DNA of 64,000 bases, taken from the NCBI GenBank assembly GCA_025594325.1, contig JANHCV010000014.1, positions 434,001-498,000 on the forward strand. Direction: 5' to 3'. Below, in pieces: positions 38,989 to 45,780 of the stretch; within the stretch, counting starts at the first letter, position 1, and each line of letters begins with the position of its first letter. The notes beneath the pieces are model-generated. The model did not search any database. It saw only the letters and a program-made list of their open reading frames with translations, and was not told where the DNA came from. The translations under genes were made by a program, and so were the position numbers. Source of the stretch: Blastocladiella emersonii ATCC 22665 (Eukaryota > Fungi > Blastocladiomycota).

Positions 38989-40456
38989 GGCAAAAGGAGT
39001 ATCAGACAGGTTGTGTATGGGGAGAGGAAGCCCTCATGGCGGAGAAAGCGACCCTCAAGTACTCGCCCTCGCTCAAAGGGACGCCCCGCTGTGCGGTCAA
39101 CAGAAATCGTGCAAACGGGGCCGAGAGTGAAGGGCTTCATCTGGCCTCTCATTTCTGGGCGGCAAGGTGTGGCGTTGCTTGCGCCACCGCGAACGAAGGC
39201 CCTTGTTCGGGCAAGGGAACTGGTTCGGGAAACCCCTGTCCGAGTCGCTTCTGGATCCGTGTCCGCAGCTGGGCTGGTGGCTTAGCTCGCGCACGCACGC
39301 GAGGAACACTTGATCTGAGCCGTGATCTGAACTTTCAAGTCGGATGGACGTTTGACCCATGTGCGATGCAATCGAGATATATTCAGGACGCTTGTGATGC
39401 GAGGTGCGCGACGCGTTTCTACGCCTTCAGAAACCCGAGAACGCCGCCAACGCGCAGATGCACCTGTTTGCGTGCCCCGCTTCGCGCGCGTGGTCGACCC
39501 CGCGGCGGGCGACGACGCCGCTGGCCGCATTGGCAACGCCTTAGCGGCGGTCGCCGAGGTTGAGATCTGGGGCAGCCTCCGCGCCGGCATCGCCTGCCCG
39601 CTCGCAGGGCAGCTCAGTGGCTCAAACCGTATCAAATGCACCGCGGCCTCCGTCGTGGGCGCGCCGCTCACAGCATGGGTTCAAGCGGATGTACAACCAC
39701 CTCTGCAAGCTCCCCGCGCTTCCTCCTGCGACGTCCATCGCCTCGGACGCCGTGCGGGGGCATGCTTGGCGCCCGCGCTGCAACGAGATCGCCGATGCTG
39801 CGCAGGTGACTGACTCATGACGGTGCCCTCGACGCGAGTGACCAGCCGCACCGCACCGCCCACTGTTGAAGCGCGCGCACCGCGCAGCAGGGCCATGCGC
39901 TGTGCTACGGCGCGCTGTGCTGCGTCACACCACTCTCCGACCCCAGCGACAAGTGCTGCAGCAGCAGTGATGCAATGGGCTCGTTCGACGGGCGCCTCAA
40001 GCGGAAGCGCACCCGCACGGAGCAAGCGCCCAACGTGGTGCGGGCTTTAGCCCTCAATTGGAAACCGAGCGCGAAGCGTTTTGGTGGTTCAAGCATATTT
40101 CCGTCATTCGAGCACCTTGCGGGGCGGGCGTGGTGAGCTCAGACGGGCGGAAATGGTCAAGTCACGTGCTGATGAACGACGCGACCTGCAGCTTGCGCTC
40201 GCGGCGTGAGCGAGTGCCACGTTCGGCACCCAAGCTCAAGCTTAAAACTCACGAGCCGGAGCGAGATTGGAATTGAAACCCAACGGTTTGAGAAGCCAGT
40301 CGCAAAGAACGCGCTTCCAACTTCAGGGCTGCGAACTCACAGCGTAGAATGCAGGCGATCTTTGGGCTGCGATGAAGAGCTTGTGCAAGGAGCTTCTACG
40401 GTGTCCAACCTGCTGGGTGAGAAAAAAAAATATTGTGACGGTGCAGTGAAATAAAG

Positions 40457-40528
40457 TGAGGCGTGAGTGAGTCGAACACCCAACCTTTTGATCTGGAGTC
40501 AAACGCGCTACCATTGCGCCAACGCCCC
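40457..40528 (-). tRNA. trnW-CCA: tRNA-Trp (CCA)
   Basis: GGGGCGT TG GCGCAATGGTAGCGC G TTTGA CTCCAGA TCAAA AGGTT GGGTG TTCGACT CACTC ACGCCTC A: all cloverleaf stems pair. Oligo-T Pol III terminator downstream. Confidence 0.95.
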
Positions 40529-44304: not shown

Positions 44305-45194
44305 TTAGCAGCAGCCGCCAAAGTCATCCGTGGCGGGCTCGTCAACATGAACTTCCTCGACATGAACCTCCTCGACATGAACCTCGACGCCCTCGGTCTC
44401 CTCATGGACGGGCTCCTCGTCGACAACCTCCTCGGTCACCTCGGTCTCGTCAATGACGGCCGCGCCGCCGTTGGCCTCGACATCGACGGCGGTCTCGTCA
44501 ACGGGGACCGCGGACTCGTACAGGGCTAGAAGCGAATGCGGCGTGTCAGCTCGGCGAGCTAGACCAGCGTTTAGCATTGCGTTCGCGTACCCTCGGGGTG
44601 GTTAGAGTCGAGAGCGATTGTGGGCGCGCCGGGACCCATCTGCTCCTGGACCTGCTGGGCGGCGTCGGCCCACGAGATGCCGGCGTTGTCGGGGTTGGTC
44701 ATGACCTCCATGACGGCGGCCGAGAACGGCGACATGCTGTCGGGGGCGCCGGCGAAGGAGAAGTCGCCCTCGTTGGCGGCGGACATCGAGATGATGTTGC
44801 CGACGCCCTCGGGCATGCCCGAGAAGTCGAACTCGACGGGCGAGTCCATGACGAGCGCGCAGTTGGCGCCCTGGGGCAGGTCCGCGAGCACCGTCTGCAG
44901 GTCCGCGTCCGAGATGACCGAGCCGTCGGGCAGCGCGATGCCGTTGCCCTCGCCGGGCATGCCCGAGAACGAGAACAGCACCGTGTCGCCGGGCGCGGCG
45001 TTGACGACCATCTCGTGCAGCGACTCGAGCACGGACTCGCGCGTGATCGGGACCTCCGAGTCGACGTCGGTCATGAGGACCGGCTCCTCGACGCCGAGCG
45101 CGCCCGCGACGTTGAGCATGCCGCTCGCGTCGTTGAGCGAGCTGGGCAGAGCGCCGTTGTTGGTGATACCGAGGCAGAGAGCGGACGAGGGCAT
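44305..45194 (-). CDS. Metacaspase-fold (peptidase C14) pseudoprotease with acidic tail and terminal GGCC
   Basis: ALCLGI..LND..LMTD..PITRESV..AAPGDTVLFSFSG aligns to the metacaspase p20 pattern. Catalytic SGHG reads SGMP and DSC reads DSP. Intron 44526-44590 (GTACGC..GCTGAC..CTAG) gives an uninterrupted 274 aa. Confidence 0.8.
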
Positions 45195-45284
45195 GGTGAT
45201 GTGTTGAGTGTTTGGTGGTCGGAGCGCGGTGGGGGAGGCGAGCAGTCGATGGAGAGCAGATGTTGGGGCGGGGAGGCGCGGGGA

Positions 45285-45291
45285 TTATATA
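45285..45291 (-). promoter_or_regulatory. TATA-like box of the pseudo-metacaspase gene
   Basis: TATATAA on the minus strand about 90 nt upstream of ATG 45194, in otherwise GC-rich DNA. Confidence 0.5.
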
Positions 45292-45780
45292 GTCAGACGC
45301 GTTGGCCAAGGACACCGCATGTCTATTCTCGCGGTGCACATCCTTGACAGTAAGAGCGAAGTGTTGCGCGCACCGCGCGGTGGACCGGCGCTCGAAAGCC
45401 ACCGCAAGATCGGCACGACCACCGCGTTGCGCCACTCTGCTCACACGCATCCTCCCGTTCTCGAAGTTGAACGGCCTTGTTCGACGCCCAGCGTTCATGG
45501 CGGTAAATCGAAGGCTTGCGACGCTGTACTGTCGAGCCAGGGGTTCTGGTCGAACACTTCAGCTCGTGGCATTGCGCCAGGTGGACGCGCACCGCGACGA
45601 CGCCAGGATTCTTTGGCTTCGATGGAAGCTCTCAAACTGCCTCTCGGACAGTACGCGACACGAACGAGCAAGCTCGGAGCTGTCTCGGTCCTCAACTGTT
45701 GCGCCGTCGCATGGAAAGCCTTCTTCTATGTATTACACTGTCTCCGTCACGGCCAGCGGTCAAAGCCACGACCACCGCGC

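What the first reader, a model, noticed from the sequence alone, without database searches (positions are those of the whole stretch)
44305..45194. Intact pseudo-metacaspase with both catalytic residues replaced: candidate decoy or regulator
Seen: a clean two-exon 274-aa gene with strong codon bias and a TATA box. It keeps the metacaspase scaffold motifs (AL.LGI, ND, LMTD, P.TR, PGD.LF.FSG), but His becomes Met (codon 44958-60, SGMP) and Cys becomes Pro (codon 44838-40, DSP). There is no N-terminal prodomain. Established: C14 proteases need the His-Cys dyad; inactive homologs such as c-FLIP and trypanosome MCA4 act as regulators; fungal metacaspases function in cell death and proteostasis. Inference: a selected pseudoenzyme that scaffolds or inhibits active metacaspases. 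I know of no described equivalent in fungi.
Basis: partly seen in the sequence, partly recalled or inferred. Interest (0 to 1): 0.8.

Follow-up and report, generated by a model that had tools for sequence, protein, structure and literature searches.

The report
Dead metacaspase with acidic Cys-tipped tail
The water fungus Blastocladiella emersonii keeps an intact, selected gene for a protease-shaped protein that has lost both cutting residues and almost all Arg/Lys. It is one of many such dead copies in a private gene family, so it probably binds rather than cuts, but its role is untested.

Summary
Window 45194..44305 (minus strand) is a two-exon, 274-aa gene, identical to NCBI hypothetical protein H9P43_009318 of Blastocladiella emersonii ATCC 22665.

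- **Fold:** residues 1-205 model confidently as a metacaspase fold (VIA-align Z 21-25 to AtMC4, AtMC9 and Yca1). Pfam's C14 model does not detect this protein itself.
- **Catalytic residues:** the His position is Met79 and the Cys position is Pro119. The loops after both positions are shortened.
- **Paralogue:** a 72%-identical paralogue has the same replacements and the same intron. Its dN/dS is below 1 and equal to that of a dyad-intact paralogue pair measured the same way.
- **Family:** the gene is not a one-off. It belongs to a Blastocladiomycota-only family with no prodomain (at least 16 B. emersonii and 6 Catenaria members). About half have lost the dyad, in at least two independent events.
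- **Extra features:** 1 Arg and 0 Lys in 274 residues, and a disordered acidic tail ending in Cys-Cys, a plausible S-acylation anchor.

That it is a pseudoprotease is well supported. That it acts as a decoy or regulator of active metacaspases is untested inference. No transcript data could be reached. The scan had already noted dead metacaspases elsewhere in this genome. I file it as a new variant of a known kind (pseudo-metacaspase, as T. brucei MCA4).

The parts
45285..45291 (-). TATA-like element (TATATAA), 97 nt upstream of the ATG
   Evidence: Read. The paralogue has CTATAAAA at a similar distance. The 300-nt upstream regions keep weak similarity (z 4.1 against shuffles), centred on this element.
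44591..45194 (-). Exon 1: codons 1-201 plus the first base of codon 202; it holds nearly all of the metacaspase-like domain
   Evidence: Product identical to P0001. AF2 pLDDT above 90 over most of it.
44526..44590 (-). Intron, 65 nt, GT..AG, phase 1
   Evidence: Same alignment column (A1 col 289) and phase as the introns of P0002, P0003, P0008, P0016 and P0020.
44305..44525 (-). Exon 2: end of the domain (ALYESAVPV), the acidic tail, Cys-Cys and the stop codon
   Evidence: The PEALYE..A(V/F) motif across the junction is conserved in paralogues.
44958..44960 (-). Met79 codon at the catalytic His position
   Evidence: Pairwise phmmer alignments to 7qp0 and 4afr place SGM on SGH. Family column table.
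44838..44840 (-). Pro119 codon at the catalytic Cys position; the following H-S-G-x-M segment is deleted
   Evidence: Alignment A1, profile against Yca1, column table.
45129..45131 (-). Asp22, equivalent of the TbMCA2 S1-pocket residue Asp95 (retained)
   Evidence: The alignment has a constant 20-residue offset to TbMCA2 numbering. Pocket residues taken from PMC4357240.
44844..44846 (-). Asp117, equivalent of the TbMCA2 S1-pocket residue Asp211 (retained; nearly invariant in the family)
45039..45041 (-). Arg52, the only Arg or Lys in the protein, within the family-conserved (V/I)TR motif
44314..44514 (-). Acidic Glu/Val/Asp-rich tail (residues about 206-272), predicted disordered
   Evidence: pLDDT 49-65. 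31 Glu and 22 Asp in the whole protein.
44345..44385 (-). 15-nt tandem repeat, 2.7 copies, coding the EVHVE repeats of the tail
44308..44313 (-). C-terminal Cys-Cys, a candidate S-acylation site
   Evidence: Paralogues P0002 (CCC), P0004 and P0006 (CC) end the same way. Yeast Yck2 is the precedent (PMC3145546).

Best explanation
Shown. The gene encodes a catalytically dead member of the metacaspase family (peptidase C14B) that selection maintains. It has a compact domain with no prodomain. Met replaces the catalytic His and Pro replaces the catalytic Cys. The loop after the His position, which carries a Ca2+ ligand in active metacaspases, and the segment after the Cys position are both cut short. 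The acidic residues that line the Arg/Lys-binding S1 pocket are kept.

Inferred. The domain works by binding, not cutting. It would hold an Arg/Lys-bearing partner or an active paralogue. Having only one Arg and no Lys, it would itself be nearly immune to Arg/Lys-specific cleavage and to Lys ubiquitination. A 70-residue disordered acidic linker ends in Cys-Cys, which I propose is S-acylated. That would tether the domain to the cytoplasmic face of a membrane, as in yeast Yck2 and, by another route, in the lipidated pseudopeptidase TbMCA4.
For: - **Fold:** AF2 mean pLDDT 85, above 90 over the domain. Foldseek's top hit is Yca1 at E 2e-11. VIA-align gives Z 24.9 to AtMC4, 24.1 to AtMC9 and 21 to Yca1, over about 208 residues at 2.1-2.3 A.
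- **Homology:** phmmer E 2.9e-27 to paralogue P0003, which passes Pfam C14 at 53.9 bits against a cutoff of 21.4. The family profile hits Yca1 at E 8.6e-37.
- **Dyad loss and loop deletions:**
- **Selection:** the paralogue P0002 is 72% identical, with the same replacements and the same intron. NG86 omega is 0.53 (bootstrap 95% interval 0.36-0.80) and ML omega is 0.09. The dyad-intact pair P0016/P0020 gives the same values, 0.56 and 0.13. GC3 is 0.92.
- **S1 pocket:** Asp22, Ser77 and Asp117 are kept.
- **Arg/Lys depletion:** K+R is 0.4%, against about 8-14% in neighbouring long ORFs and 2-6% in the other family members apart from P0002 (1.1%).
- **Cys-Cys end:** shared by P0002, P0004 and P0006. 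Precedents are PMC3145546 and PMC3220528.
Against: - No expression data: no RNA run was listed, and only the genome assembly carries the protein. The genome paper's text mentions no RNA-seq, transcriptome or caspases.
- No test of binding, lipidation or localisation.
- The retained Asp residues may be structural rather than a working pocket. With the loops shortened, the pocket may not exist.
- NG86 omega of about 0.5 is only moderate constraint.
- The long stem (0.98 substitutions per site) leading to the P0001/P0002 pair shows a burst of change that may have created an unrelated function.
- Pfam does not recognise the protein itself.
Confidence: 0.55

Rival explanations
1. It is an acidic calcium-binding or calcium-buffering protein. 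The dead domain is only a stable scaffold, and the function lies in the very acidic surface and tail (net charge about -50), perhaps held at a membrane by the Cys-Cys end. This would match the dead paralogues that carry DxDxDG calcium loops.
For: 53 Asp+Glu against 1 Arg+Lys, and a calculated pI at the bottom of the scale. In B. emersonii, DxDxDG loops (3-12 per protein, one in P0003) occur in six of the eight dyad-less paralogues and in none of the dyad-intact ones. There are weak EF-hand Pfam matches. An earlier scan note describes the same architecture elsewhere in the genome.
Against: P0001 and P0002 have no DxDxDG loop. The loop holding a Ca2+ ligand of active metacaspases is shortened. 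If only the tail mattered, the 72% conservation of the domain would be unexpected.
Confidence: 0.2
2. It is a c-FLIP-like direct inhibitor. It pairs with an active paralogue through a caspase-type sheet-edge interface and blocks its activation.
For: The domain model shows only six long strands by DSSP. It aligns about as well with six-stranded caspases and legumains (Z about 20) as with some metacaspases. A caspase-8:c-FLIP complex is among the matches (3h11). Active and dead paralogues coexist in the genome.
Against: Metacaspases studied so far act as monomers, and their sheet blocks the caspase dimer interface (PMC4357240). No complex was modelled or measured. Strand counts from a DSSP listing cannot settle the topology.
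Confidence: 0.12
3. It is a decaying or neutrally drifting gene copy with no function.
For: Catalytic residues lost, loops deleted, below Pfam detection. No expression evidence.
Against: - Both exons are open and the splice signals are intact.
- GC3 is 0.92, like working genes in the window.
- The paralogue has the same state, omega is below 1, and omega equals that of a dyad-intact pair.
- The intron keeps only marginal similarity to the paralogue's and the 3' flank none above shuffles, while the domain keeps 72% amino-acid identity.
- A TATA element is conserved.
Confidence: 0.05
4. It is still a protease that uses other residues.
For: The fold and part of the pocket are retained.
Against: Both dyad positions are non-nucleophilic (Met, Pro) and the C-H-S-G segment is deleted. 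The remaining domain Cys residues (7, 111) lie in core strands and the domain His residues (59, 199) lie in or beside helices, according to the model's secondary structure.
Confidence: 0.03

Closest known systems
Trypanosoma brucei metacaspase 4 (MCA4), a lipidated pseudopeptidase (PMC3220528)
   Same: A metacaspase fold without a working dyad, encoded beside active paralogues. MCA4 is membrane-associated through acylation; here acylation is only proposed.
   Different: - MCA4 changes only Cys to Ser and keeps His and its loops. Here both residues are replaced and the flanking loops are shortened.
- MCA4 is acylated at the N-terminus (myristate and palmitate). Here the candidate site is a C-terminal Cys-Cys.
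- MCA4 is cleaved by MCA3. This protein has a single Arg and no Lys, so it offers almost no metacaspase cleavage site.
- The two arose independently in different lineages.
Bacterial pseudo-orthocaspases (Tyr-Ser in place of His-Cys; PMC6426788, PMC7889975)
   Same: Both dyad residues are replaced, and dead and active forms are both widespread within one family.
   Different: They are prokaryotic and have a different replacement pair. Here the replacements vary among paralogues (Met-Pro, Met-Gly, Met-Ser, Arg-Thr, Lys-Ser, Ala-Ser, Gln-Ser).
Yeast Yca1 and C. glabrata MCA1 (type I metacaspases; 4f6o, 7qp0)
   Same: The same fold and recognisable motifs. They are the best sequence matches among solved structures.
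   Different: They have an N-terminal prodomain, the His-Cys dyad, a full Ca2+ loop and about 60 more residues between the Cys strand and the C-terminal part.
Plant type II metacaspases AtMC4 and AtMC9 (6w8r, 8a53)
   Same: They give the highest structural Z (24-25) and also start at strand beta1 without a prodomain.
   Different: They have a long linker between the two halves, are active enzymes and are not acid-tailed.
c-FLIP (dead caspase-8 homologue)
   Same: A dead homologue of a clan CD protease that could regulate its active relatives.
   Different: c-FLIP works through death-effector domains and caspase-type heterodimers. No such domains occur here, and no dimer evidence exists.
Yck2 palmitoylation signal (PMC3145546)
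   Same: A globular domain, then a long disordered low-complexity linker, then a C-terminal Cys-Cys with an aromatic residue a few positions upstream (Phe269 here).
   Different: The linker is Gln-rich in Yck2 and Glu/Val-rich here. Yck2 has Phe-Phe where this protein has a single Phe. Recognition by an Akr1-type transferase is untested.

Membership tests
Peptidase C14B (metacaspase) superfamily: homology and fold | Caspase/haemoglobinase fold with metacaspase-type sequence motifs | tested here: met
   VIA-align Z 21-25 over about 208 residues. Foldseek Yca1 E 2e-11. Family profile against Yca1 E 8.6e-37. E 2.9e-27 to P0003, which passes Pfam C14.
Peptidase C14B (metacaspase): active enzyme | Catalytic His-Cys dyad | tested here: not met
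   Met79 and Pro119 occupy the dyad columns.
Peptidase C14B (metacaspase): active enzyme | Score above the Pfam PF00656 gathering threshold | tested here: not met
   No Pfam match even at E up to 10. 18 of the 23 family members do match.
Peptidase C14B (metacaspase): active enzyme | Acidic S1 pocket for Arg/Lys (TbMCA2 Cys92, Asp95, Ser156, Asp211) | tested here: inconclusive
   The equivalents are Ser19, Asp22, Ser77 and Asp117, so three of four are kept. Whether a pocket forms with the shortened loops could not be checked.
Peptidase C14B (metacaspase): active enzyme | Four-Asp Ca2+ site (TbMCA2 Asp173, 189, 190, 220) | tested here: inconclusive
   The loop after the His position is about 12-17 residues shorter than in most paralogues. 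My residue mapping across the gaps (Asn84, Asp96, Glu121) is uncertain.
Type I metacaspase | N-terminal prodomain before strand beta1 | tested here: not met
   The protein starts MPSSALCLGI, which is strand beta1.
Pseudopeptidase (TbMCA4-like) | Protease fold, catalytic residue(s) lost, gene kept under selection | tested here: met
Pseudopeptidase (TbMCA4-like) | No peptidase activity in an assay | not testable with these tools
   Needs recombinant protein.
Pseudopeptidase (TbMCA4-like) | Lipid anchoring, and processing by an active paralogue | not testable with these tools
   The Cys-Cys end is only a candidate site. One Arg and no Lys argue against processing.
c-FLIP-like inhibitor | Heterodimer with the active homologue | not tested
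   No complex modelling was available. Known metacaspases are monomers.
Yck2-type C-terminal palmitoylation substrate | Cys-Cys at the very C-terminus after a disordered linker | tested here: met
   Residues 273-274 follow a tail with pLDDT 49-65.
Yck2-type C-terminal palmitoylation substrate | Acylation shown by acyl-biotin exchange or click labelling | not testable with these tools
   Experimental.

The most novel reading that the evidence does not exclude
Early-diverging zoosporic fungi have built a private system of prodomain-less metacaspases in which dead copies work with the live ones. The dead copies would be uncleavable (free of Arg and Lys), membrane-tethered and calcium-binding. They would act as substrate traps or calcium gates that set when and where the live paralogues fire, for example during zoospore formation or germination. 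This gene would be the most stripped-down dead member.
Probability: 0.15. Interest if true: 0.8.

Novelty: new variant of a known kind. Interest (0 to 1): 0.55.

Why it matters
Pseudo-metacaspases are known from trypanosomes and pseudo-orthocaspases from bacteria. My paper searches found none described in fungi. The reviews I looked at treat fungal metacaspases as active, Ca2+-dependent enzymes.

Here a fungus carries a whole family in which about half the members have lost the dyad, in at least two independent events, and still look selected. This gene pairs that loss with a near-total purge of Arg/Lys and a likely lipid anchor. That gives a natural set of matched live and dead paralogues for asking what the metacaspase fold does apart from cutting.

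The practical limit is that B. emersonii genetics are weak and I could reach no expression data.

Tried and rejected
- **Pfam on the protein itself:** nothing, even at E up to 10. Family membership had to be shown through paralogues, a profile and the fold.
- **RNA evidence:** no RNA run was listed. A search of any kind listed only three DNA-type runs from one sample, possibly the assembly's own source. The exact-protein look-up found only the genome assembly. The genome paper's text mentions no RNA-seq, transcriptome or caspases.
- **Profile search in the word-indexed database:** it added only unnamed metagenomic C14 proteins and did not widen the taxonomic picture.
- **dN/dS estimators:** NG86 (0.53) and ML (0.09) disagree, because third positions are almost only C or G. 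I did not pick one. I ran a dyad-intact paralogue pair as a control with both estimators.
- **Deep comparison:** omega for P0001 against P0003 by NG86 is about 1, with dS saturated. I treat it as uninformative.
- **P0010:** its CDS could not be rebuilt with GT..AG introns, so the dead pair P0007/P0010 was not analysed.
- **Antisense ORFs over the gene:** 44577-45347 (256 aa) and 44620-45207 (195 aa) on the + strand. I take them as the usual long open frames of GC-rich DNA. They had no support and were not pursued.
- **Rab-type geranylgeranylation of the Cys-Cys end:** considered and set aside. From general knowledge, it needs a Rab fold to be presented by REP.

Full report
**What is in the sequence**

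On the minus strand an ATG at 45194 opens a frame that runs to 44591. A 65-nt GT..AG intron (44590-44526) with a CTGAC branch-like site follows. A second exon runs from 44525 to the TAA at 44307-44305. The spliced CDS is 825 nt and gives 274 residues. This product is 100% identical to NCBI hypothetical protein H9P43_009318 of Blastocladiella emersonii ATCC 22665, on a 1.25-Mb contig of GCA_025594325.1.

The two codons it named are exactly as stated: ATG at 44960-44958 (Met79) and CCC at 44840-44838 (Pro119).

GC3 is 0.92. That is normal for long GC3-rich (likely coding) ORFs in this window, which range from 0.83 to 0.97. It argues for a maintained reading frame rather than for special codon bias.

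**Is it a metacaspase fold?**

Pfam does not see the protein at all. A plain phmmer search against PDB sequences gives only E 0.011 to C. glabrata metacaspase. The link is nevertheless firm.

- An exhaustive phmmer search finds 25 relatives.
- 18 of the 23 aligned family members match Pfam Peptidase_C14 at E up to 0.01. The six members checked one by one that match all score above the curated cutoff.
- The nearest paralogue outside the P0001/P0002 pair, P0003, is hit at E 2.9e-27 and scores 53.9 bits against the cutoff of 21.4.
- A profile of the family hits yeast Yca1 at E 8.6e-37.
- An AlphaFold2 model built on that alignment has mean pLDDT 85, with the domain (1-205) mostly above 90.
- Foldseek ranks Yca1 first at E 2e-11.
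- VIA-align gives Z 24.9 to AtMC4, 24.1 to AtMC9, 22.7 to Geobacter GSU0716 and about 21 to Yca1 and C. glabrata MCA1. About 208 of 210 domain residues align at 2.1-2.5 A.

**The active site**

The pairwise alignments put SGM on SGH of 7qp0 and 4afr. The constant 20-residue offset to TbMCA2 numbering (His158, Ser156, Asp95, Cys92) confirms the register. In the family alignment Pro119 falls in the column of the Cys of D-x-C-H-S-G.

Two deletions are specific to this protein and its close paralogue. The loop after the His position is about 12-17 residues shorter than in most paralogues. The H-S-G-x-M segment after the Cys position is missing.

Of the four residues reported to line the TbMCA2 S1 pocket (PMC4357240), the equivalents of Asp95, Ser156 and Asp211 are kept as Asp22, Ser77 and Asp117. 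Cys92 is Ser19. Whether a pocket still forms could not be tested.

**Is it selected?**

A paralogue on another contig (P0002, H9P43_003055) is 72% identical over the domain, without gaps. It has SGM and MD-A-P at the same places, an acidic tail and a CCC end. Its single intron is at the same codon and phase.

- For the domain, NG86 gives omega 0.53 with a bootstrap 95% interval of 0.36-0.80. ML gives 0.09.
- The two differ because third positions are almost only C or G. As a control I ran both estimators on a dyad-intact pair of similar divergence, P0016/P0020. They gave 0.56 and 0.13. The dead pair therefore appears as constrained as a live-looking pair.
- The introns are at most marginally alignable (z 2.8) and the 3' flanks are not (z 1.4). 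The upstream regions keep weak similarity (z 4.1) centred on the TATA element.
- The intron of this gene sits at alignment column 289, phase 1, exactly as in P0002, P0003, P0008, P0016 and P0020. A second family intron (column 63) is absent from P0001-P0004. This both supports the gene model and agrees with the tree below.

**It is not alone**

The relatives are 16 proteins of B. emersonii, 6 of Catenaria anguillulae and one unnamed MetaClust entry. A few long multi-domain proteins from elsewhere make up the weak hits.

- Of the 23 aligned, 11 keep His and Cys. Another 11 have lost both, with varied replacements. P0012 keeps His but has no Cys at the aligned position.
- A maximum-likelihood tree puts this gene and P0002 together (100/100) on a long stem (0.98). 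They lie inside a dead-only group with P0003, P0004 and P0011 (87/84). P0001-P0004 share Met at the His position.
- The dyad state needs five changes on the best tree, and at least two are forced by well-supported branches.
- Fifteen of the 23 start with Met-Pro directly before strand beta1, so the lack of a prodomain is a family trait.
- In B. emersonii, DxDxDG calcium-type loops occur in the tails of six of the eight dyad-less members and in none of the dyad-intact ones. Weak EF-hand matches go with them. This gene and P0002 lack such loops and have a Glu/Val/Asp-rich tail instead.
- An earlier scan note, with a follow-up, described the loop-bearing dead copies elsewhere in this genome. I reached the same picture from my own alignment.

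**Two further features**

First, the protein has no Lys and one Arg. The single Arg is in the family-conserved (V/I)TR motif. K+R is 0.4%, against about 8-14% in neighbouring long ORFs and 2-6% in the other family members apart from P0002, which has 1.1%. Since metacaspases cut after Arg or Lys (PMC4357240), the protein offers them almost nothing to cut. It also has no Lys for ubiquitin. That this is the reason for the purge is my inference.

Second, the tail (about residues 206-272) is predicted disordered and contains a 15-nt tandem repeat coding EVHVE units. It ends in Cys-Cys. P0002 ends in CCC, and P0004 and P0006 end in CC. Yeast Yck2 has the same layout: a globular domain, a long disordered linker and a C-terminal Cys-Cys palmitoylated by Akr1 (PMC3145546). 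The trypanosome pseudopeptidase MCA4 is also membrane-bound through acylation (PMC3220528). Lipidation here is a proposal, not a result.

**How it most likely works**

Shown: a dead, compact metacaspase-fold protein maintained by selection. Inferred: a membrane-tethered binding module that cannot cut and can hardly be cut. It would act on Arg/Lys-bearing partners or on the live paralogues.

- The main rival is a calcium-buffer or calcium-sensor role carried by the acidic surface and tail.
- A c-FLIP-style heterodimer is possible but unsupported, because known metacaspases are monomers.
- Decay, or residual catalysis by other residues, is unlikely for the reasons above.

**Limits**

No transcript evidence could be reached. 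The model's coordinates could not be inspected, so statements about pocket shape and strand topology rest on alignments and a DSSP string. The family census uses representatives clustered at 50% identity, so paralogue counts are minimum figures.

**Novelty**

Searches for pseudo-metacaspases returned the trypanosome and bacterial cases, and nothing for fungi or Blastocladiomycota. A 2025 review of fungal and protozoan metacaspases mentions a pseudopeptidase only in its citation of TbMCA4. I rate this a new variant of a known kind.

Noticed in passing
Paralogues P0003, P0004, P0006, P0007, P0010, P0011 (loci L005, L006, L009, L010): DxDxDG calcium-type loops (3-12 per protein, one in P0003), often about 24 residues apart, occur only in the tails of dyad-less B. 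emersonii family members. None occurs in dyad-intact members.
   Followed up: partly
Family alignment A1, N-termini: 15 of 23 family members begin Met-Pro immediately before strand beta1, so a mature N-terminal Pro may be a conserved feature. Its meaning is unknown (an N-degron or a structural cap are guesses).
   Followed up: no
P0009 (locus L004): A 217-aa dyad-intact paralogue has Gln-Ala-Cys at the Cys motif, where the family has Asp-x-Cys. This is a caspase-like QAC. An earlier scan note says the same.
   Followed up: no
Family introns: There are two phase-1 family introns, at A1 columns 63 and 289. The first is missing from P0001-P0004 and both are missing from P0004. This intron loss marks the Met-at-His clade.
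   Followed up: yes
window 40456-40528 (-): A tRNA-Trp (CCA) gene lies about 3.8 kb downstream of the gene.
   Followed up: no
window about 45781 upward (-), = L002 1-914: The upstream neighbour on the same strand is a 1031-aa class C GPCR-like protein (ANF_receptor, Peripla_BP_6, 7tm_3) according to precomputed Pfam hits.
   Followed up: no
window 44345-44385: The three His residues of the EVHVE repeats, and a fourth nearby, are absent from the paralogue's tail (which has no His at all). The repeat is therefore recent and probably not the conserved part of the tail.
   Followed up: partly
P0019 (Phlebia brevispora), P0022, P0024 (Diplonema papillatum): Proteins of 1500-1670 aa with three or four matched stretches to this domain, which suggests tandem metacaspase-like domains in one chain.
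   Followed up: no
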